64,000 nt of DNA. Origin: Macrostomum lignano. Lineage: Eukaryota. The position numbers and the translations under genes are program-made. The notes under the pieces were generated by a model. That model did no database searches, was not told where the DNA came from, and saw only the letters and a program-made list of their open reading frames with translations. Shown one piece after another: positions 9,446 to 35,748 of the stretch. Each line of letters begins with the position of its first letter. The stretch's first letter is position 1. Location of the stretch: NCBI GenBank assembly GCA_002269645.1, contig NIVC01000815.1, forward strand, positions 172,080 through 236,079. The letters are read 5' to 3'.

Positions 9446-9933
9446 GACTGACTGACTGACTGACTGACTGACTGACTGACTGACTGACTGACTGACTGAC
9501 TGACTGACTGACTGACTGACTGACTGACTGACTGACTGACTGACTGACTGACTGACTGACTGACTGACTGACTGACTGACTGACTGACTGACTGACTGAC
9601 TGACTGACTGACTGACTGACTGACTGACTGACTGACTGACTGACTGACTGACTGACTGACTGACTGACTGACTGACTGACTGACTGACTGACTGACTGAC
9701 TGACTGACTGACTGACTGACTGACTGACTGACTGACTGACTGACTGACTGACTGACTGACTGACTGACTGACTGACTGACTGACTGACTGACTGACTGAC
9801 TGACTGACTGACTGACTGACTGACTGACTGACTGACTGACTGACTGACTGACTGACTGACTGACTGACTGACTGACTGACTGACTGACTGACTGACTGAC
9901 TGACTGACTGACTGACTGACTGACTGACTGACT
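9446..9933. repeat. Perfect (GACT)n microsatellite, about 122 copies
   Basis: Direct inspection. Confidence 0.97.
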
Positions 9934-9951
9934 CATTTACTCACCATGCGT

Positions 9952-11803
9952 CTAAACAGCTTCCGCCTCTGCACTGGGCTCCGCAGCGACCTCCCTGACG
10001 GTCTTGCCATTGTCATCGGTTCCATCGTCCTCCGCCGCGGACTCGGCAGCCCGCAGCAGGGCAGCCAGGTGCCGCTCGGTGTACAGGTGCTCGCTAGCCG
10101 GCAAATCAGCGGGCAGCTCGCCAGCGCACAGGCGGCACCGACCGCCAGGAAGGCCCAGCCAGCTGGCCGCAGGACTTGGCGCCCGCTGAGTGGACGAGCC
10201 GCGGCCACGGCCACCGCCGCCGGCGTCGCCGCTGCTGACATTGTTGCTGAGCCAGGCGCGGATGAGACGGCCGGGGAGGCCGAGAGCGGCGGCCACAGAT
10301 TCAACCTGCGGCTCGGACGGGGCGCCGCCGTCGATGCGCAACAGCTGCTGTTGCTGCTCGAAAAGCAGCCGCAGAGCCACCGCCTGCTGGGGACTCGGCA
10401 AGCCGGCCGCGGCAGGCGTCTGCGGTTGCTGCCGCTGTTGCTGCTGCTGCCCAGCAGTGCTGAGATCGAGCGGAGCGTCCAGCTCCGGGTTCTCTTCCTC
10501 CTCCTCGGCGGCAACAGCAGTCCGACAGCCGAGCAGCCAGCTGCTGTCCGAAGGAATCTGCGACGCAGGCGTCGGCTGCCGCCGTTCAATGCGCGCCCGC
10601 TTGCGCCCGCTGGCAGCTTCGGCAGCTTCAACGGCTGCTGGAGCAGCGGCAGCAGTGGACACCTCGTCGCCGGCGGCGGCCGCGGAAGTAGCGGACGGCC
10701 GCGGACGCTTTCGCCTCGCGGCGCCGAGCGCCTGAGTGTGCAGCTGAACGCGCACGTGCTGCTCAATCTCCTCGGGCCGGGCGGGGAGCACCTCCACCTT
10801 GCCGGTCTTCTCGTACTCCTCCAGGTTGAGCTGCGTAGCCGGCGGGATGCTGAAGTTATATGGCGAGTCTTTGCAGCGCTGCCGCTCCTTGAACAGCGTG
10901 TTGCGGAACCAGTGCTTGATGACCTTCACAGGCAGGCCGGTGTCGCCCGACATCTGGGCGATCAGCTGATCGTTTGGCGAGCTGTTCAGATTGAAATTGG
11001 CCTTCAGCACGCGTAGCTGGTCCTCCGTGATGCGGGTCCGCGCCCGCTTGCCGTTCTGCTGGCCGCCGCCACCGCCCGCGTCGCTACCGCCGTCTCCACT
11101 GCAGCCGCCAGCGCTGCCGGCGCCGCCGCCGCCACTGCTACCGCCGCTGGCAGCCGCGGACGAGCTGCTGTTGGTGCCAACCGACGAAGTAATTACGGAT
11201 GTCGCAGCAGCGGCACTCGTTGCCATCGTGATGGACGCAGCCGGAGTGACCGCTGCTGACTGTGCCGGCTTCGCCGACGGGGCCGTGCCGTTAGCGGCCT
11301 GAGCTGCCGCGGCGGCTACAGCGGCTGCTGCGGCGGCCACCGATGTTACTGGCGGCCCGGGCGGCGGCTTCGTAAGCGGCGACGGAATCAGCGGAGGCAG
11401 GAAGTGGCAGAGCAGCGGCGGCGGGTGGGTGGGCGGAGATCCGGCCGACGAGGCAGCGATGGAATGCGGCGGCAGCGGCGGCGGCGGAACAGCCAGCGAG
11501 GCCGCAGACATGGACGATGGCGTCGGATGCGGCGGGTGCAGCGGGAACGGCAACAGCAGCGGCGGCAGGAAGAGCGGCAGCTGATGAGACTTGGCGTGCG
11601 ACCTCAGGTGCTCCGGGCCGGCGCAGGCGAGGCCGCAGAGCGGGCAGCGGCAGCTGGCCAGCCGCTTGTGCGTGTTGGAGCGCATGTGGGCCGCCAGCTG
11701 GATCTGGGCGCCGAAGCCCACCTGGCACTGCTCGCAGCGGTAGACCTCGCCGCCCCCGCCAGTTGGCGAAGATTCCGGCAGAACGGCCGAGACGGAAGCG
11801 GAG

Positions 11804-11834
<31 letters not shown>

Positions 11835-12094
11835 ATGGTGTCAAGTGAAGAGTCTCGTAGTGGAGGCGGAGCTCCACCGAGCTGCCCAGCCGCTGGTGGC
11901 AAAGCAGGCAGGCGAGCCGACTGGCCGCGTGCTGCCGTCGGTGCCGCTCCAGCTGGCGGCCATCCCTGAAGGCCAGGCGGCAGGCGGCGCAGGCGTGGGG
12001 GAATCTGGCGGAGGAAGCCGCAGCTACCGCCGAACCGCTGGACGGCAGCTCGGCGTCGCCGCCGGCAGAGCGGGTTGTCTTGGCGTGGATTTCG
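9952..12094 (-). CDS. zfh2: ZFHX-like gene, last coding exon (C2H2 fingers, homeodomain, degenerate homeodomain, terminal finger)
   Basis: Acceptor aaatcccgcag|C GAA ATC; open to TAG at 9952. Contains several C2H2 fingers and the homeodomain [25 protein letters not shown]...[28 protein letters not shown], typical of ZFHX. The five exons sum to 1655 codons after the 1-nt correction. Confidence 0.93.
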
Positions 12095-26210: not shown

Positions 26211-28210
26211 CTCTCTCAGCTTGTGGCCAGGCTGTTGGAAGTGCCGCAGCAGTTCCGCCTTAGTCTGGCAGACGCAGCTGCACAGCTGGCAGCGATAGCG
26301 ACAGCAGCCGGGGCCGCTAGTGAGCCTCCGCTCCTCGCTGCAGAGGTGCAGTAGCAGGTAGGCATTCAGCTGGTGACTGGGAGTGCCAGGTGCAGCTGCA
26401 TTTTGTGCAGCGAGGCCGCCACGTAGCCGCAGGCATTGCAGCGCAGCTGCACAGGGTTGCCACTGGTTGCAGTGGACAGCCGGGAGGTGCCGCCGTTGGC
26501 ATCGCCGCCGGCGCCCAGCCGCAGGTGGTTGAGCAGCTGCAGCCGCTGCATGTGCTTATCAGTCTTGCAGTGGAGGTGAAAATTCGCCTTCAGATTGGAG
26601 CGATAGTCGCATAGCGCGCACTGCCAGTAGCCTGCGGCGTAGCCTGTGGCCTCCGAGCTGGGCTCAAGTCGCGGCTCCACGGAGTGCGCGTGAAGCTCCG
26701 GCAGCGAGTCGGTGTGGAAGCTGTCGCACACCTGGCAGGTGAACAGGTGCGACGGATCGTTGGCGGATCGAGCACCGGCTGACCGAGGCTGATGCGGCTG
26801 TCTGTGCTGCTGGGCCTGCTGCTGCTGATGGTGCCGCCCGCTGCCGCCCGGCTTCGGGTGCATCGCCGATCGAGCAGCGCCCGAGGCCGAAGTCGACGCC
26901 GGAGCGAGGCCTGACAAAGCGGAGGCGCCGCCGTTTCCGCCGGAGCCGGCAATGACGCCGGCGGCGCGCTGCAGATCGTGCACGTTGTTGCAGTGCTTAT
27001 CGGACTGCATGTGGATGGCCAGGTTGCCCTTGGTGGTGGTGCTGTAGTTGCACACCTCGCAGCGGTAGGGCTTGTAGCCGCAGTTGTAGGTCTCGCCGCG
27101 GGCTAGCCGCGGATGGCTCTGGTTAGTCAGGCAGTAGTGGCAGGCGTCGCATCGGCCCTGACCGCCAGGATCGCCCGAGCCGGTTTCCGGGTGCTTCTCT
27201 TTGAGGTGAATCTCCAGAGTCTCCTGGTACTTGTAGTGCCAGTTGCATTTCGGACACTTGATGTGCTTGTTCAAGTGGCGTGCCTGGCCGCTGCTCTGCT
27301 GCTGCTGCTGCTGTTGCTGCGAGTCGGCTGGCAGATGCGGCATCGGCGGTGGCGGCCCCAGCGGCGGCGGCAGGAAGGCTGTCCAGGGAAAGGCGGACAA
27401 GAGGCCGGCAAAGGAGGGCGGCGGATGAGGCGGCGGCAGCGGTGGCAGCGGCAGAGACGGCAGCTGGACAGGCAGCATGGATGCTGCAGCTTCATCAGGT
27501 TCATCCGCGGACTCGTCAGCAGACTCGGGGTTGGCCGCATCAGCAGCTCTTTCCTCGGTCTCCGCCTCGTCGCCTTTGTTATTCTCCTCGTCCGAGCCAT
27601 TCGCGGCTTCCTGGTCCTGTTCGCTACGGCTGTCGCTGTGCCACGGGCGGTCCTCGAACAGCCGCAGGCGGAGTCCGCGCCCGCCCCAGTCAGCGATGAC
27701 GCCAGCCACTCCGGCGCCAAACGGTTCGTCCGGCGCCGCCAGACTGTGCCCCGCGCAGTGTCCGGTCAGCTCGTCCGCCCTGGCCAGCCGCCGCCTGCAG
27801 GCGAGACAGACAAGCAGCGGCGGCTCTTCAGTTGGCGAGGCGGCGGACAGTCGGCAGTAATCGACTGCGACCGAGCGACCGAGGGCTCTGTGGAGGCGGG
27901 TCTCGGCGGCCTGACGACATTCGGCCAGCGACGTCAGCGGATCAGCGGCTGCACCGCTACTGGATCGCTCGCGCAGCAGGAAGGCTCGAACTCCGCACTG
28001 CTCGGCCAGGCACAGGAGCACAGAATCTGTTGCAGACTCGGCCAGCAGCAGCTCGGACTCTTCATCAGTCACGGCGTCAGTGGAGTCTGCGCCAATTTTG
28101 TTATCATCGTTGACTTCGGTCTGACCAGCCAGGAGGAGCAGCAGCTGGAGGCTCGCGCCACTGCTGGCGCGGATTTTGGCGCCAATTAATCGGTTGAAAT
28201 CTGTCGACAT
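26211..28210 (-). CDS. zfh2: ZFHX3/4 (zfh2/ATBF1)-like zinc-finger homeobox gene, coding exon 1; apparent 1-nt deletion at 26379-26381
   Basis: Translation contains hallmark ZFHX blocks KCPKCNWHYKYQETLEIHLKEKHP and HPRLARGETYNCGYKPYRCEVCNYSTTTKGNLAIHMQSDKH. The ORF track stops at 26366, but after adding one C the frame continues PSHQ...YRCQLCSCVCQTKAELLRHFQQPGHKLRE to donor GAG|GTGAGC at 26210 (phase 0). Length 2000+1 is divisible by 3. Confidence 0.92.
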
Positions 28211-30130: not shown

Positions 30131-31594
30131 TATGAATTGTTAAAACTGAGATAAAGTCATAAGAGATTGAAAATAACAATATCAAAATTCTTTACTAACA
30201 ATTTGTATGTGGAATAGTAAAATAAAATAACGCTGTTTTTGTTTCCAACTTCGCCTTGTTAGATTAGATAGGCTTGTAAAATTTTTCACTGGTGGTTGGG
30301 ACCCTCGGGGAGGTCGGGGGTTATTAGACGGTTGGCTATTAATTAGTCTGGTGCCCCGGGATTGGGTGGTGGGGAGCTGGGGTGGTTGGGGGTTGGGTTT
30401 GGATTTTTATTGATACCGACGCTTGAACGGAGCCAGCCACTTTGCATAAGAAATCATATCAATTATCGGAAATTACACCCAACAAGTATAGAGTAAACAC
30501 GTAGCGCGTATACCACAGAATTATTAAGACTTTAATATCTTTTTATTATTTTTTAGTGTTTTGTTAGTTAAAAGTAACGTCATGGCGCATCCCCCCAGAC
30601 CGACATTGTAATATTTGACTGGGCATTGTTGCACAATCAATTAGACTACCCACTACCCAGACGTGTTATAACAAAAATAATTCCAACTGTTCAAAGTTAA
30701 AGTAGCCCTTTTTGGGCGCGCTTGTGTTGCTGCCCAGACAAACATGCGCACCATTTGTGTTGTGTATCCTATACAGTCTTAACAGGTCATCTACAGTATA
30801 TTAATAATAGAAATGAATCAATTACTCACGCAAAGGAAATCAATCATATTTTGAAAAATAATGTTACATTAGCTAGAAAAGCTCCGAGGCCAGTTGTTCT
30901 GTGTATTAATAATAATATAATATTTTGTTAACCAAATTTTCTAAATTTGTTTCACATCTGCACGCAATGCTTATTCGCATAGAAACTATTTAATAGCCAT
31001 GCTTTACATGTACTTCGATACATTTTCAAAACTTAGCATTGTTTCCCAGATAAATTCCCATCGTCTGGGGGAAGCCAAAGTATTTGAGAGCATAGGCGTT
31101 AAACCGAGAGGGTTGGTCCAGAGTCTAGGTAAAATGCTAGGTAAAAAATGCATTCAGCTTGATAGTTACCAGCATGACGGATCTTCGAGACCTTCAACAC
31201 GATGAAACAAGTAAATTATTTAAATTTCTGTCTATTTGAGCACAGTGGCAGCAAACGTGTGCCTTTTTAAAGAAAACAAACGAGAACAGTAGTATCTTGA
31301 GGATAAGAGCCAGTTCATTTGAAATTAAATTTATTGGATATAATTAGAAATCTTGTCTAGTTTAAAAGAGAAGTACTAGACGCGAATCTTTACATATGTA
31401 TATATCAATTTATTTATTCATAGACGTTTTGAAAGAAAAAACAATCATATACGGTAACACGGTAACACTACAGAAGTAATATATTGTTCATTCAGATTTC
31501 ATTTGTAAGCAATGCAATAAATGAGTAACAAGGTATAGCCAATGTACACTTGTTAAAGCAACAGTCACTCATACAAGTTCCGATAGAGTGCCCA

Positions 31595-32235
31595 CAGTCG
31601 CTCATAGAACGATAAACAGTCGCTCATAAAACGGTAAACTGTCGCTCATAGAATGGCTAACTTACAGTTGATAATAGGATGACAACTAATCACTCATAGG
31701 ATGGCAAACAGTAGCTCATAGAATGGCAAACGATCGCTCATAGAATGGTAAATAATGGCTCATAGAATGGTAAATAATGGCTCATAGAATGGCAAACAAT
31801 CGCTTATAGGATGGCAACTAATAGTTCATAGAATGGCAAACGATCGCTCATAGAATGGTAAATAATGGCTCATAGAATGGTAAATAATGGCTCATAGAAT
31901 GGCAAACAATCGCTTATAGGATGGCAACTAATAGCTCATAGAATGGCAAACGATCGCTCATAGAATGGTAAACAATCGGTCATAGGATGGCAAACAGTCT
32001 CTCATATAATGGCAAATAATCGCTCATAGGATCGCAAACAGTCGCTCATAGAACGGTAAACAATCGCTCAAAGAATGGCAAATAATCGCTCATAGAATGG
32101 CAAATAATCGCTCATAGGATCGCAAACAGTCGCTCATAGAACGGTAAACAGTCGCTCATAGAACGGTAAACAATCACTCATAGAATGGCAAATAATCGTT
32201 CATAGGATCGCAAACAGTCGCTCATAGAACGGTAC
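31595..32235. repeat. 22-bp degenerate minisatellite (CGCTCATAGAATGGCAAACAAT) directly 3' of SNF8
   Basis: Direct inspection. Confidence 0.9.
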
Positions 32236-32264: not shown

Positions 32265-33010
32265 CTAGGCAGCCAGTAGCGCGGGCACCAGACTGGGGAA
32301 CCAGAACGCCCTTTCGCCGCTCGGCTCGCCGTCGTCAACCCAGGCGAAAGCTTCGCGCACCAGCTGGTCGAGCACGCGGTCGACTCGCTCAGGCGCCCAG
32401 GCCAGGGCTGTCCGACAAGCTGACGCCGTCACTCGGCCGCCATTGCCGTCGGCAAGGCGCATCACCGAGTTGGCATCGAGGCTGAGCTCGCCAGGCACCG
32501 ATTGCACCAATCGCCGGTTGCCAAGCGTTACCAGAGTGAATCCGTTGCCTAGGCAACGGAGCTTATCCACGGCGCGAACAATGTCGTCCTCGGAGACCGG
32601 ATCTCCGGCGCCTCGTCCAGCATTGAGCGCTTTCAATAAATCGCTAACGTCCATCAGACCGCCGTGCTTGTGGCTAGTTGCCATGGTAACCTCGATAATC
32701 TTGACGCCAAGCTCGAAATAGAAGCCGCCAACCCGAGCATGTCGGACCAGAAGCCTTTGCCGGATTGCAGCGGATCGACGCCAATAGCGGCGCACATCTG
32801 CTGGAACTGCGCCCGGAACTGCTGATTGCGTCGAATCTTGTCGGCGTGCTTCCTGGCGAACTCCTCCAGGTGTTGCCGGAACGCGCCAACCTGGGCGCTG
32901 ACCTGCGCCAGCTCCTGGTCGGCCAGTTGGCCGCCTTTGCTTTTGAATCGATCGGCCGCGGCCGCGTGCCGCTGAGCGCCGCCAACGCCAACACCGCGTC
33001 CGCGTCGCAT
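32265..33010 (-). CDS. SNF8: SNF8/Vps22/EAP30 (ESCRT-II subunit), intronless; apparent 1-nt deletion at 32732-32734
   Basis: MRRGRGVGVGGA...FRAQFQQMCAAIGVDPLQSGKGFWSDMLG (ORF 32654-33103) continues in another frame as VGGFYFELGVKIIEV...LVQSVPGELSLD...LDQLVREAFAWVD...FWFPSL* (ORF 32265-32795). The span is 746 nt; adding 1 gives 248 aa plus stop. Confidence 0.92.
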
Positions 33011-33113
33011 GGCAACTAAATTTGGCGTAGCATGAATGGTGTTTGCCGGTTGAGCGATTCCGCTTAAAAAACTGCTGGACACATGCTTAATATAAAAAGG
33101 CACGCCAAAACAA

Positions 33114-33165
33114 GCATGTTTAAAGCCAACGCGTTTCGATGCAATCTGTCATCTTCAGGGCATGC
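33114..33165 (-). ncRNA. Second hammerhead ribozyme copy, inverted, with weakened stem II
   Basis: The reverse complement reads GCC-CUGAAGA-U-GACAGAUUGCAUC-GAAA-CGCGUU-GGC. It differs from the plus-strand copy by 3 substitutions, all in stem-loop II. Confidence 0.6.
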
Positions 33166-33603
33166 CACAGTCAAGACTGATTTCATTTAAGGCCGGTCGA
33201 TAAATAAGCGAACACTAGAGGGATAGTCACCCTGTCAACTCACAGCACTCTGAGTTGGGTGTTCCACTACGGCTAGCAAGCTGCACATTCAAACTAAGGC
33301 TTGTGTAATTTTATTTGCAAAGCTTTAATCATTATTAGTTTGAAATCGTTTTTGCAACCATTGAACAGCTGTATCGGATCGTTGTCACGACACGCAACGC
33401 AACCAAACAAGTAATCTTGAATAGACGAGACGAACTCTTTAGCCAGTGTTCTCTTGCTCTTGTGTGCAGGTGTCGCTTAGTTTTTCCTATGTAGGAAACT
33501 GATCAACAAAGCAACGGAATTGATAGAAAACACCTGCCTTGAGAGGAATAGGCACAACCGACATAAGTGTCTGTTTATAAATTTGTTTTTTGTGATGATT
33601 GTG

Positions 33604-33655
33604 GCATGCCCTGAAGATGACGGTTTGCGTCGAAACGCGTTGGCTTTAAACATGC
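33604..33655 (+). ncRNA. Minimal type I hammerhead ribozyme motif (Penelope-like element type)
   Basis: GCC-CUGAAGA-U-GACG(guuug)CGUC-GAAA-C(gc)GU-U-GGC. All core nucleotides are present, stem II is perfect, stem III is palindromic (ACGCGU), and stem I is GCC/GGC, extendable via GCAU/AUGC. Confidence 0.75.
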
Positions 33656-34509
33656 TTGTTTTGGTGTTCCTCCTTATATCATTCATTAAGCGAGCTAATC
33701 TTCCACAGTTCCACATGCTTGACGTTATCACGTTATTAGGCCATACGACCAATTAAGGTCATGGTCCATAGGAGACGGGATTTTTTTAGCATCACCAAAA
33801 CTGCTCGATGGAGCAGTTGCTAATTGCATTGCAAGCCGTGTCAGACTACTGCTAGTAGACAAAATCAATTCAAATAGTCAAAATACTCAATAATAAGATT
33901 TACTAGCAATAAAAAAGACCTTAAGTCGTCTTAGTTCTCAAATGAGAAGTATATAATCTTAAACACAATACTCAAATATCATATGCAATCTAAAATATAA
34001 TGGTATATAATTTCAAAAGGGATCTTTCTTAGAAATTCCCCAAGTTGAAACTCAAAACTGACTCGAGCCTAGACATGGATCCAGGAGCCTAAATAGTTGA
34101 CAGTTATACTGAAAGTACTCTAAACTTATGCAAAACAAAAATAACAGACTCAATTAAAACTCATTACATTATTTCTTCCCACAAGCCTTGAAAACATACA
34201 AGGAATCCAACACATCCGATGTCTATGGTAATGAGACGATTCAACCTTTTAAGGAAATTTTTTAATAGATAGCTTACTTCTAATTATGTACGGAATCTCA
34301 GGAACCAGCGACAGAAGCAATAAAGGGTATTGAGCACGGACGGATTAGTCGTTAATCCCGGCGTCATGAGCCGCAGCAGCCTGGCATGGGTCAGCTCGCC
34401 TTACATGGCTCATTTCAAACACAAAAGCGCAGCTGTGCAGGTTGTGCTCTACAGTTCAAGGCTGTGCGTCACCTGCCAGGAGAAGCTGGTGAGTGTCTCT
34501 AAATACGTA

Positions 34510-35748
34510 TCTGATGTACTGTCGGAGGGTGTCATGGAGGTGTTGTGCTGTTGGAGGCGTGTCATGGAGGTGTTGTGCTGTTGGAGGCGTGTCATTGAGG
34601 TAGATGTGCTGTTGGAGGCGTGTCATGGAGGTGTTGTGCTGTTGGAGGCGTGTCATGGAGGTAAATGTGCTGTCGGAGGCGTGTCATGGTGTTGTGCTAT
34701 CGGAGGCGTGTCATGGAGGTTGTGTGCTGTGGGAGGCGTGTCAAGGTGTTGTGCTGTCGGAGGCGTGTCATGGAGGTTGTGTGCTGTGGGAGGCGTGTCA
34801 TGGAGGTAGATGCGCTGTCGGAGGCGTGTCATGGAGGTGTTGTGCTGTCGGAGGCGGGTCATGGAGGTGTTGTGCTGTCGGAGGCGTGTCATGGAGGTGT
34901 TGTGCTGTCGGAGGCGTGTCATGGAGGTGTTGTGCTGTCGGAGGCGTGTCAAGGTGTTGTGCTGTCGGAGGCGTGTCATGGAGGTTGTGTGCTGTCGGAG
35001 GCGTGTCATCATGGAGGTGTTGTGCTGTCGGAGGCGTGTCATGGAGGTGTTGTGCTGTCGGAGGCGTGTCAAGGTGTTGTGCTGTCGGAGGCGTGTCAAG
35101 GTGTTGTGCTGTCGGAGGCGTGTCAAGGTGTTGTGCTGTCGGAGGCGTGTCATGGAGGTGTTGTGCTGTCGGAGGCGTGTCATGGAGGTGTTGTGCTGTC
35201 GGAGGCGTGTCATGGAGGTGTTGTGCTGTCGGAGGCGTGTCAAGGTGTTGTGCTGTCGGAGGCGTGTCATGGAGGTTGTGTGCTGTCGGAGGCGTGTCAT
35301 CATGGAGGTGTTGTGCTGTCGGAGGCGTGTCATGGAGGTGTTGTGCTGTCGGAGGCGTGTCAAGGTGTTGTGCTGTCGGAGGCGTGTCATGGAGGTGTTG
35401 TGCTGTCGGAGGCGTGTCAAGGTGTTGTGCTGTCGGAGGCGTGTCATGGAGGTGTTGTGCTGTCGGAGGCGTGTCATGGAGGTGTTGTGCTGTCGGAGGC
35501 GTGTCAAGGTGTTGTGCTGTCGGAGGCGTGTCATGGAGGTGTTGTGCTGTCGGAGGCGTGTCATCATGGAGGTGTTGTGCTGTCGGAGGCGTGTCATGGA
35601 GGTAGATGCGCTGTGGGAGGCGTGTCATGGAGGTAGATGCGCTGTGGGAGGCGTGTCATGGAGGTAGATGCGCTGTGGGAGGCATGTCATGGAGGTGTTG
35701 TGCTGTCGGAGGCGTGTCATGGAGGTGGTGTGCTGTCGGAGGCGTGTA
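34510..35748. repeat. 30-bp minisatellite (GTCATGGAGGTGTTGTGCTGTCGGAGGCGT) with shorter and longer variants
   Basis: Direct inspection. Confidence 0.95.

What the first reader, a model, noticed from the sequence alone, without database searches (positions are those of the whole stretch)
33105..33664. Inverted pair of hammerhead ribozymes at the SNF8 5' end
The two 64-bp arms each encode a minimal type I hammerhead (CUGAAGA, extra U, stem II, GAAA, palindromic ACGCGU stem III, GUU cleavage triplet). The minus-strand copy is sense to SNF8, and its predicted cut (33128/33127) is 117 nt upstream of the ATG, in the putative 5'UTR or outron. Its three substitutions all fall in stem-loop II while the core is intact. 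Palindromic stem III hammerheads of PLEs are thought to work as dimers. The two arms could also base-pair into a long hairpin that inactivates both or feeds small-RNA pathways. A transposon ribozyme might therefore define or regulate the 5' end of an ESCRT-II mRNA.
Basis: partly seen in the sequence, partly recalled or inferred. Interest (0 to 1): 0.72.

Follow-up and report, generated by a model that had tools for sequence, protein, structure and literature searches.

The report
Decayed Penelope retrotransposon with hammerhead motifs
The inverted pair of hammerhead-ribozyme motifs upstream of the flatworm SNF8 gene is real, but it is the ordinary remnant of an old Penelope-like retrotransposon insertion, and nothing here shows that it shapes the SNF8 mRNA.

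Summary
The window is Macrostomum lignano DNA. The described sequence is there. It is a 91-nt inverted repeat (33083-33173 / 33596-33686), and each arm carries CUGAAGA, an extra U, helix II, GAAA, the palindrome ACGCGU and then U.

The 422 nt between the arms are not anonymous. On the minus strand they hold a decayed GIY-YIG endonuclease of a Penelope-like element (PLE), upstream of the minus-strand hammerhead. The locus is therefore a roughly 510-nt 5'-truncated PLE copy joined head-to-head to a 91-nt inverted terminal fragment. This is a documented PLE insertion architecture. I found the same outward-facing pairs in PLE loci of a sea urchin, a rotifer-like metagenome contig and several other metagenome contigs.

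Only the plus-strand copy passes a strict minimal-hammerhead descriptor. The SNF8-sense copy has two CpG-to-CpA changes that cut helix II from 4 bp to 2 bp. The gene models for SNF8 and its paralogue start about 19-20 nt before the ATG. That is about 98 nt downstream of the predicted cut and is not preceded by an AG acceptor. The hammerhead arm is identical in the paralogue, but so is the whole 970-nt tract around SNF8.

Verdict: a new member of a known kind. A regulatory role for SNF8 is unsupported but has not been tested experimentally.

The parts
33083..33590 (-). Long 5'-truncated copy of a Penelope-like element (about 510 nt). It comprises a decayed GIY-YIG endonuclease C-terminal region, a 3' UTR and a hammerhead motif. 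It has the same orientation as SNF8, and its 3' end lies 73 nt upstream of the SNF8 ATG.
   Evidence: tblastn with an Adineta vaga Penelope RT-EN protein hits 33523->33446. A PLE endonuclease profile gives its best hits of the whole window and of L001 here.
33297..33548 (-). Remnant of the PLE GIY-YIG endonuclease domain. It reads VY...C...SYIGKTKRHLHTRAREH...KLIMIKALQIKLHKP and is broken by a stop codon and a frameshift in the window copy.
   Evidence: hmmsearch with a profile of 26 PLE endonuclease domains. In the paralogue L001 it matches 9481-9732, profile positions 24-105, i-E 4.6e-6. In the window it matches 33496-33443, i-E 1.3e-4. tblastn shows 50% identity over 26 aa to Pen1a. The window coordinates of the full span are transferred from L001.
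33128..33158 (-). SNF8-sense hammerhead motif, C3 to H17, degenerate. The core boxes and the ACGCGU palindrome are intact. Helix II is reduced to 2 bp by two CpG->CpA changes. The predicted cut is at 33128/33127.
   Evidence: fails the strict descriptor; hammerhead-like fold +0.3 kcal/mol; 6.6 bits with covariance model R1.
33596..33686 (+). Short inverted 5'-truncated copy, holding the terminal 91 nt of the PLE. It is joined head-to-head to the long copy and forms the right arm of the inverted repeat.
   Evidence: Analogous 146-nt and 2620-nt inverted copies occur in PLE loci L005 and L002, and further ones in L043, L019 and L025.
33611..33641 (+). Intact-looking minimal type I hammerhead motif: CUGAAGA, extra U, 4-bp helix II GACG/CGUC, GAAA, ACGCGU palindrome, U17. 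Helix I is GCC/GGC. The predicted cut is at 33641/33642. It faces the divergent neighbouring gene.
   Evidence: the only descriptor hit in 64 kb; 0 in 200 shuffles; hammerhead-like fold -7.1 kcal/mol. The same core, helix III and helix I start occur in 50 metagenome contigs, where helices I and II covary.
32265..33010 (-). SNF8/VPS22 (ESCRT-II) coding sequence, a single exon. Relative to the paralogue it has a 1-bp deletion in a G run at 32735 that shifts the frame.
   Evidence: (EAP30, E 4.4e-50; 100% identical to M. lignano BOX15_Mlig005884g1 after correcting the frame).
33028..33031 (-). Inferred 5' end of the annotated SNF8 transcript models. It is about 98 nt downstream of the predicted hammerhead cut.
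   Evidence: P0001 starts at TPNLVAM (33028) and P0002 starts at YAKFSC (33029). Both are 5'-partial ORFs of 254 aa in different frames. This is an inference about how the models were built (TransDecoder on TBONE transcripts, PMC5730564).

Best explanation
The structure is the relic of a single old insertion of a canonical endonuclease-bearing Penelope-like retrotransposon (PLE) into the intergenic region between SNF8 and a divergently transcribed neighbour in Macrostomum lignano.

PLE integration often leaves a 5'-truncated copy joined head-to-head to a second, shorter, inverted 5'-truncated copy. Here the long copy runs 33590->33083 on the minus strand. It retains the end of the GIY-YIG endonuclease ORF, now broken, followed by the 3' UTR with its hammerhead. 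The short copy, 33596-33686 on the plus strand, retains only the terminal 91 nt with the hammerhead. The two hammerheads therefore face outward on opposite strands.

In an active PLE these minimal hammerheads sit in the pseudo-LTR. They have essentially no helix III of their own and are thought to cleave as dimers formed through the palindrome, helped by the element's protein. At this locus the element is dead. The SNF8-sense motif has lost half of helix II, and each strand has only one motif. The most likely present function is none.

Shown:
- the anatomy of the locus;
- the endonuclease remnant;
- the motif features;
- the same architecture in other PLE loci;
- presence of the insertion in both paralogous copies.

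Inferred:
- the twin-priming origin of the inverted copy;
- the direction of the CpG decay;
- the lack of cleavage;
- the position of the SNF8 5' end.
For: 1. Endonuclease remnant. A PLE RT-EN protein was translated from the supplement of PMC3846280. Its only notable tblastn hit in the window plus L001 (84 kb) lies inside the 422-nt interior, on the strand of the left hammerhead. A profile of 26 PLE endonuclease domains gives its top hits there too, covering profile positions 24-105 in L001 with i-E 4.6e-6.

2. Spacing. The hammerhead lies roughly 70-95 nt after the inferred end of the ORF. In bona fide PLE loci the distance is 100-130 nt in L005, L006 and L009.

3. Shared motif features. In 7 of 8 PLE loci fetched through their RT-EN proteins, the same descriptor finds a minimal hammerhead downstream of the ORF on the same strand. 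Every one has one extra nt after A9 and a palindromic helix III.

4. Outward-facing inverted pairs. They occur in L002 (arms 2620 nt) and L005 (146-nt arm, 100% identical). They also occur in at least 8 metagenome loci carrying the same hammerhead subtype. One of these, L043, has an endonuclease remnant between the arms.

5. Literature. PMC4209133 reports dual minimal hammerheads 100-700 bp apart on opposite strands in Schistosoma mansoni, an unpaired nt 5' of helix II, and a palindromic helix III. PMC8557442 describes the inverted 5'-truncated copy as a typical PLE insertion structure. PMC11167929 shows that a PLE protein cleaves and extends both DNA strands.

6. Covariation. The hammerhead subtype CCUGAAGAUG...CGAAACGCGUUGG occurs in 50 metagenome contigs. 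In the 19 distinct sequences of the modal-length (37-nt) class, helices I and II covary: 82.9% of cells are paired against 30-44% when the partners are slid, 9 of 12 pairs show compensatory changes, and 0 of 500 shuffles reach the observed value.

7. Decay. The endonuclease ORF has a stop and a frameshift. The arms are 88% identical, whereas the arms of L005 are 100% identical. Two helix II pairs are lost in the minus copy.
Against: - No other copy of this family could be retrieved from M. lignano. No RT domain, family consensus or intact element from the same genome supports the assignment.
- A homology search with the endonuclease remnant found nothing, and Pfam found nothing.
- Rfam has no hit.
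- A small covariance model built from five PLE hammerheads scores the window copies at only 9.1 and 6.6 bits, which is not significant.
- No target-site duplication or PLE 'tail' was identified.
- The 373 nt next to SNF8, including the minus hammerhead, are 100% identical between the paralogues. This would also fit selection on an exapted promoter or leader.
Confidence: 0.87

Rival explanations
1. First reader's idea. The SNF8-sense hammerhead is transcribed in the SNF8 5' leader or outron and self-cleaves, alone or as a dimer. It thereby sets or regulates the mRNA 5' end. Alternatively, the solo pseudo-LTR has been exapted as the SNF8 promoter and leader.
For: - The motif is in sense orientation 117 nt upstream of the ATG, with its core boxes intact.
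- In active PLEs the pseudo-LTR that carries the hammerhead lies directly upstream of the ORF and is thought to hold the promoter (PMC11167929; in L006 the hammerhead abuts the next ORF). SNF8 sits where a PLE ORF would sit.
- There is no same-strand upstream gene within 10 kb, so the SNF8 promoter must lie in or near the relic.
- The proximal 373 nt are identical between the paralogues.
Against: - Helix II of this copy is reduced to 2 bp. The hammerhead-like fold is +0.3 kcal/mol, and the favoured alternative pairing GAUG/CAUC sequesters G8 and A9.
- There is no second same-strand copy for dimerisation.
- PLE minimal hammerheads show low or no autonomous cleavage, and no RNA-seq reads start or end at the cut site of an active PLE (PMC4209133, PMC11167929).
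- Both gene models start about 98 nt downstream of the cut, and not at an AG acceptor.
- The identical tract also covers the entire SNF8 CDS, so it is not specific to the motif.
Confidence: 0.07
2. The inverted arms form a long hairpin RNA when read through. The hairpin feeds a small-RNA pathway (endo-siRNA or piRNA) that silences PLEs or modulates the flanking genes.
For: A transcript spanning 33075-33695 is predicted to pair the arms into an ~85-bp near-perfect stem (MFE -235.9 against -154.6 +/- 5.5 for shuffles, z -14.9).
Against: - This is a generic property of any inverted repeat.
- There is no evidence that the region is transcribed across both arms.
- The flanking genes diverge from it, so read-through from either gene runs away from the element.
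- No small-RNA data were available.
Confidence: 0.05
3. The 604-bp unit is a non-autonomous element in its own right. It would be either a MITE-like DNA transposon with hammerhead-bearing terminal inverted repeats or a non-LTR retrozyme, rather than a PLE fragment.
For: It has terminal inverted repeats of 91 nt and a small size. Animal retrozymes carry type I hammerheads and derive from PLE pseudo-LTRs (bioRxiv 10.64898/2026.07.22.740005).
Against: - The interior holds a one-sided endonuclease remnant in the orientation expected for a PLE 3' end.
- No target-site duplication is seen in the sequence.
- There is no direct or tandem repeat of the unit, and a tandem repeat is the defining feature of non-LTR retrozymes.
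- There is no other copy in 84 kb.
Confidence: 0.03

Closest known systems
Minimal hammerhead ribozymes of Penelope-like elements (Cervera & de la Pena 2014, PMC4209133)
   Same: - CUGANGA and GAAA boxes.
- One unpaired nt between A9 and G10.1.
- G10.1-C11.1 pair.
- Helix III reduced to a palindrome (ACGCGU).
- Location at the 3' end or pseudo-LTR of a PLE.
- Frequent solo or opposite-strand dual motifs 100-700 bp apart, described in another flatworm, S. mansoni.
   Different: - Helix II is short (4 bp, and 2 bp in the minus copy), against 5-8 bp in typical PLE hammerheads.
- Helix I is only 3 contiguous bp.
- The host element is a dead fragment.
- No other family member from M. lignano was seen.
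Canonical EN+ PLE insertion architecture: partial tandem plus inverted 5'-truncated copy (Arkhipova 2006; Craig et al. 2021, PMC8557442)
   Same: Head-to-head inverted 5'-truncated copies that share only their 3' termini, with the hammerheads facing outward. I reproduced this in L002, L005 and L043.
   Different: Both copies are severely truncated (about 510 nt and 91 nt). No RT, no direct pseudo-LTR and no recognisable 'tail' remain.
Hammerhead subtype CCUGAAGAUG-helix II-CGAAACGCGUUGG in 50 JGI metagenome contigs
   Same: Identical core, extra U, helix III palindrome, cleavage triplet GUU and first two helix I pairs. L058 carries helix II GACGC/GCGUC, against GACG/CGUC here. Some of these contigs lie next to PLE endonuclease remnants.
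   Different: Those copies have helix I of 5-6 bp and helix II of 5-6 bp, and their flanks are unrelated. The source organisms were not identified here. From memory these are termite-gut metagenomes, so the DNA is probably from the insect host.
Gene-embedded hammerheads with proposed regulatory roles (rodent Clec2 3' UTR discontinuous hammerhead; amniote intronic HH9/HH10)
   Same: A hammerhead motif in sense orientation close to or within a protein-coding transcription unit.
   Different: Those are canonical, efficiently cleaving, evolutionarily conserved monomeric ribozymes with tertiary loop contacts. This one is a degenerate dimer-type transposon relic with no evidence of conservation for its own sake.

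Membership tests
PLE minimal hammerhead (min-HHR) | Catalytic boxes C3-U-G-A-N-G8-A9 and G12-A-A, followed by A15.1...U16.1 and H17 | tested here: met
   Both copies carry CTGAAGA...GAAACGCGTT. There are 2 matches in the window and 0 in 100 shuffles.
PLE minimal hammerhead (min-HHR) | One unpaired nucleotide between A9 and G10.1 | tested here: met
   An extra U is present in both copies. The same feature (extra=1) is present in every comparator PLE hammerhead found.
PLE minimal hammerhead (min-HHR) | G10.1-C11.1 closing a helix II of at least 4 bp | tested here: inconclusive
   The + copy has GACG/CGUC, 4 bp, and meets the feature. The minus, SNF8-sense copy has GA/UC, only 2 bp, and does not.
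PLE minimal hammerhead (min-HHR) | Palindromic 15.x-16.x (helix III/loop 3), allowing a dimeric helix III | tested here: met
   ACGCGU is present in both copies. RNAcofold predicts an intermolecular AACGCGUU helix in the minus homodimer.
PLE minimal hammerhead (min-HHR) | Lies in the 3' region or pseudo-LTR of a PLE, on the strand of the RT-EN ORF | tested here: met
   A GIY-YIG remnant lies ~285 nt upstream on the same strand as the minus copy. The + copy belongs to the inverted terminal fragment.
PLE minimal hammerhead (min-HHR) | Helices supported by covariation within the family | tested here: inconclusive
   Covariation is strong for the same hammerhead subtype in metagenome contigs. It cannot be tested for the M. 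lignano family because only the two arms and their identical paralogues were available.
PLE minimal hammerhead (min-HHR) | Self-cleavage at H17 | not testable with these tools
   This needs in vitro transcription. Published PLE minimal hammerheads cleave weakly and only as dimers or with PLE protein (PMC4209133, PMC11167929).
Canonical EN+ Penelope-like element | GIY-YIG endonuclease with the PLE-type motif ...Y.I.C..C...YIG.T.R.L..R..EH... | tested here: met
   The remnant reads SIPLLC*SVSYIGKTKRHLHTRAREH. The profile hit has i-E 4.6e-6 in L001 and 1.3e-4 in the window. It is present only as a broken remnant.
Canonical EN+ Penelope-like element | TERT-like reverse transcriptase domain | tested here: not met
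   There is no RT similarity in the window or L001. This is expected for a 5'-truncated copy, so the locus is a fragment of a PLE and not an element.
Rfam hammerhead families (type I, II, III, HH9, HH10) | Score at or above the family threshold with the Rfam covariance models | tested here: not met
   There is no hammerhead hit at the gathering threshold or at E<=10. As a control, bona fide PLE hammerheads in L002, L003 and L005 are also missed. The models do not cover this class.
Non-LTR retrozyme | Tandem direct repeats, each unit carrying a type I hammerhead | tested here: not met
   There is no direct or tandem repeat of the unit. The two motifs are inverted.
MITE / TIR DNA transposon | Terminal inverted repeats flanked by a target-site duplication, with a non-coding interior | tested here: not met
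   Terminal inverted repeats are present, but no target-site duplication is visible. The interior carries an oriented endonuclease remnant.

The most novel reading that the evidence does not exclude
A solo Penelope pseudo-LTR has been exapted as the promoter and 5' leader of an essential ESCRT-II gene. Under this reading SNF8 transcription starts inside the relic. The sense hammerhead, weakened but rescued in trans by dimerising with PLE transcripts that share the ACGCGU palindrome, or by PLE protein, trims the leader. SNF8 output would then be coupled to PLE activity. The 100% identity of the proximal 373 nt between the paralogues would reflect selection on this arrangement.
Probability: 0.05. 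Interest if true: 0.65.

Novelty: new member of a known kind. Interest (0 to 1): 0.22.

Why it matters
As it stands, this is a clean, annotated example of a PLE relic in a flatworm model genome. The literature search found no paper mentioning hammerhead ribozymes in Macrostomum.

It also shows how to recognise such relics. The clue is to look for the GIY-YIG remnant between outward-facing hammerheads, because Rfam does not detect this hammerhead class. That is useful for repeat annotation and for anyone choosing the SNF8 upstream region as a promoter in M. lignano transgenesis.

It would matter more only if transcript data showed that the relic supplies the promoter or processes the leader of SNF8.

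Tried and rejected
- Rfam at the gathering threshold over the whole window and at E<=10 over 32900-33900 gave no hammerhead. A control showed that Rfam also misses true PLE hammerheads, so this negative result carries no weight.
- A self-BLAST of the element against the window found no other copy.
- Pfam on the endonuclease remnant gave no hit.
- A homologue search with the stitched remnant gave no hit. The M. lignano PLE family could not be reached this way.
- A homologue search with an A. vaga Penelope protein returned mostly rotifer proteins and none from M. lignano. The results served only to build the endonuclease profile and to fetch comparator loci.
- Covariance model R1, built from five PLE hammerheads, scored the window copies at 9.1 and 6.6 bits, which is not significant. 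An independent true PLE hammerhead (L006) scored only 14.9 bits, so the model is underpowered.
- The supplements of PMC4209133 and PMC8557442 are not held.
- I looked for a TATA-like element. TTTTTATATTAA lies at 33100->33087 at the PLE terminus, about 60 nt upstream of the model 5' end. That is too far for a canonical TATA box, so I drew no conclusion.
- I looked for a trans-splice acceptor at the model 5' end and found no AG. The nearest site, TTTAG, is 8 nt before the ATG, downstream of the model start.
Full report
**Observation.** The region holds one inverted repeat, with arms at 33083-33173 and 33596-33686 (91 nt, 88% complementary) and 422 nt between them. Aligning the arms shows a 69-nt core with three differences and more divergent outer ends. 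Each arm carries CUGAAGA, an extra U, a 13-nt stem-loop, GAAA, the palindrome ACGCGU and a U. The pattern occurs twice in 64 kb and never in 100 shuffles. A strict RNAmotif-style minimal-hammerhead descriptor finds exactly one hit in the window, the plus-strand copy at 33611-33641, and none in 200 dinucleotide shuffles. The minus-strand copy (33158->33128) fails only on helix II. Its three differences from the plus copy are G->A, U->A and G->A. Two of them are CpG->CpA changes that turn the G-C and C-G pairs at 10.4-11.4 and 10.3-11.3 into A.C and C.A, leaving 2 bp. The energy of the hammerhead-like fold is -7.1 kcal/mol for the plus copy and +0.3 for the minus copy. In the minus copy an alternative GAUG/CAUC pairing that consumes G8 and A9 is favoured.

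**Genomic context.** The downstream ORF is SNF8/VPS22 (EAP30, E 4.4e-50). After correcting one frameshift it is 100% identical to a Macrostomum lignano protein, so the window is M. lignano. A paralogous or homeologous locus (L001, NIVC01001010.1) is collinear with the window at about 95% identity. It carries the whole structure, and both arms are identical to those of the window. The insertion therefore predates the duplication. Between 32392 and 33362 the two loci differ only by one base in a G run at 32735, while the flanks differ by 1-3%. The perfect conservation of the SNF8-sense arm is thus part of a 970-nt identical tract that includes the whole CDS. It says nothing specific about the hammerhead.

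**What the element is.** I translated an Adineta vaga Penelope RT-EN ORF from the supplement of PMC3846280. Its best tblastn hit in the window, and one of its two best in L001, falls inside the 422-nt interior on the minus strand: SIPLLC*SVSYIGKTKRHLHTRAREH against SIPCLNCDKVYIGETSRMKETRMKEH, the core of the PLE GIY-YIG endonuclease. A profile of 26 PLE endonuclease domains (proteins) gives its top hits of all six frames at the same place. In L001, where a 5-bp deletion happens to keep the frame, the match covers profile positions 24-105 (i-E 4.6e-6), from the GIY strand to the C-terminal ...KLIMIKALQIKLHKP. In the window it covers the YIG...EH core (i-E 1.3e-4). The minus strand therefore reads: decayed endonuclease C-terminus, about 70-95 nt of 3' UTR, hammerhead, element end. 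That is a 5'-truncated Penelope-like element of about 510 nt (33590->33083). The right arm is a second, inverted copy truncated to the last 91 nt.

**Comparison with real PLE loci.** I fetched eight loci through PLE RT-EN proteins and scanned them with the same descriptor. Seven have a minimal hammerhead downstream of the ORF on the same strand. All seven have one extra nucleotide after A9 and a palindromic helix III (ACGT, AGCT or ACATGT). The distance from the stop codon is 100-130 nt in L005, L006 and L009. L006 even shares CUGAAGA-U...GAAAC..GUU. Two loci show outward-facing inverted pairs. L002 (Lytechinus) has 2620-nt arms. L005 has a 146-nt, 100% identical inverted terminal fragment abutting the 5' end of a full-length copy. 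This agrees with the literature:
- PMC8557442 describes the inverted 5'-truncated copy as a typical PLE insertion structure.
- PMC4209133 reports dual minimal hammerheads 100-700 bp apart on opposite strands in Schistosoma mansoni.
- PMC11167929 shows that a PLE protein nicks and extends both DNA strands, which offers a mechanism for the head-to-head copies. Applying that mechanism here is my inference.

**The hammerhead subtype elsewhere.** A scan of metagenome contigs for CCTGAAGATG-N9-15-CGAAACGCGTTGG returned 50 contigs with 27 distinct helix II sequences. In the 19 distinct sequences of the modal-length class, 82.9% of cells in helices I and II form standard pairs, against 30-44% when partners are slid. 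Nine of 12 pairs show compensatory changes, and 0 of 500 shuffles reach the observed values. The pairs fixed by the search pattern are uninformative. Seven of these contigs have PLE endonuclease remnants near the hammerhead. The 50 contigs hold 71 descriptor hits in 287 kb, including 10 outward-facing pairs, 8 of them with gaps of 74-1559 nt. Their inverted repeats resemble the one in the window. L043 has an endonuclease remnant between its arms. The motif class is therefore a selected RNA structure in active elements, and the window's arrangement is one of its usual footprints.

**Negative and inconclusive tests.**
- Rfam finds no hammerhead, but it also misses the hammerheads of bona fide PLE loci.
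- A covariance model built from five PLE hammerheads ranks the plus copy first in its 3-kb neighbourhood, but at 9.1 bits (E 0.71), with 6.6 bits for the minus copy. An independent true PLE hammerhead scores only 14.9 bits, so the model lacks power.
- Pfam and a homologue search with the endonuclease remnant found nothing.
- No further copy of the family from M. lignano could be reached.

**Does it act on SNF8?** The evidence points against this, though it is indirect.
- The SNF8-sense copy is the degraded one.
- Dimer-type hammerheads need a second copy on the same RNA, and there is only one per strand. A read-through RNA would instead fold the arms into an ~85-bp duplex that buries both cores.
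- PLE minimal hammerheads cleave weakly in vitro (PMC4209133). In the one active PLE studied, cleavage needed the element's protein, and no RNA-seq reads began or ended at the cut site (PMC11167929).
- The two independent gene models are 5'-partial ORFs in different frames. They begin at 33028 and 33029, so the transcript models begin at about 33029/33030, roughly 98 nt downstream of the predicted cut.
- That position is preceded by GC or TG, not by the AG of the M. lignano trans-splice acceptor (YTNCAG, PMC8629364). It therefore looks like a transcription start or an incomplete 5' end, and not like an outron junction.
- The nearest upstream genes are on the other strand, so there is no operon read-through.

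Some points keep a small probability open that the solo pseudo-LTR contributes promoter function. The relic ends only 73 nt from the ATG, and PLE pseudo-LTRs are thought to hold promoters.

**Verdict.** The transposon and hammerhead identification is right and can now be made precise: a decayed 5'-truncated PLE plus an inverted terminal fragment. The proposed role at the SNF8 5' end is unsupported. This is a new instance of a known kind.

Noticed in passing
window 32735 (minus-strand SNF8 CDS): The SNF8 ORF is frameshifted by one missing G in a GGGG run relative to paralogue L001. The surrounding ~970 nt are otherwise identical. This is either a homopolymer assembly error or a very recent inactivation of this copy.
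   Followed up: partly
window 32392-33362 vs L001: This tract of ~970 nt (the SNF8 CDS plus 350 nt upstream) is 100% identical between the paralogous loci, while the flanks differ by 1-3% and carry indels. This suggests gene conversion or strong constraint.
   Followed up: partly
window 31594-32229: A tandem array with a 22-nt unit (also scored with a 110-nt period, 5.7 copies) starts about 35 nt after the SNF8 stop codon. Its length differs between the paralogues.
   Followed up: no
window 34515-35747: A 30-nt minisatellite of about 41 copies at 90% identity produces long spurious ORFs in all frames. By transfer from the annotation of L001, it lies within the range of the divergent neighbouring gene (137-aa product, no Pfam domain).
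   Followed up: no
L010-L059 (JGI metagenome contigs): Fifty contigs carry the same hammerhead subtype. In all, 71 minimal hammerheads (ACGCGT, ACATGT and ACGT palindromes) occur in 287 kb, which looks like animal host DNA rich in PLE relics inside metagenomes. From memory these sample codes are termite-gut communities; I did not verify this.
   Followed up: partly
L008 2768-2799, L009 2629-2662: These PLE hammerheads have the U3-A8 covariant core (UUGANAA) in place of C3-G8, as described for the S. mansoni Cercyon element in PMC4209133.
   Followed up: no
window 9952-11877 and 26366-28210 (minus strand): Large GC-rich exons encode homeodomain and C2H2/ZFHX3-type zinc-finger segments (Pfam hits). 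They are probably parts of one zinc-finger homeobox gene downstream of SNF8.
   Followed up: no
window 33087-33100 and 33672-33682: Both PLE termini end in an A/T-rich TTATAT(T) motif. On the SNF8 side it reads as a TATA-like TTTTTATATTAA about 60 nt upstream of the gene-model 5' end.
   Followed up: no
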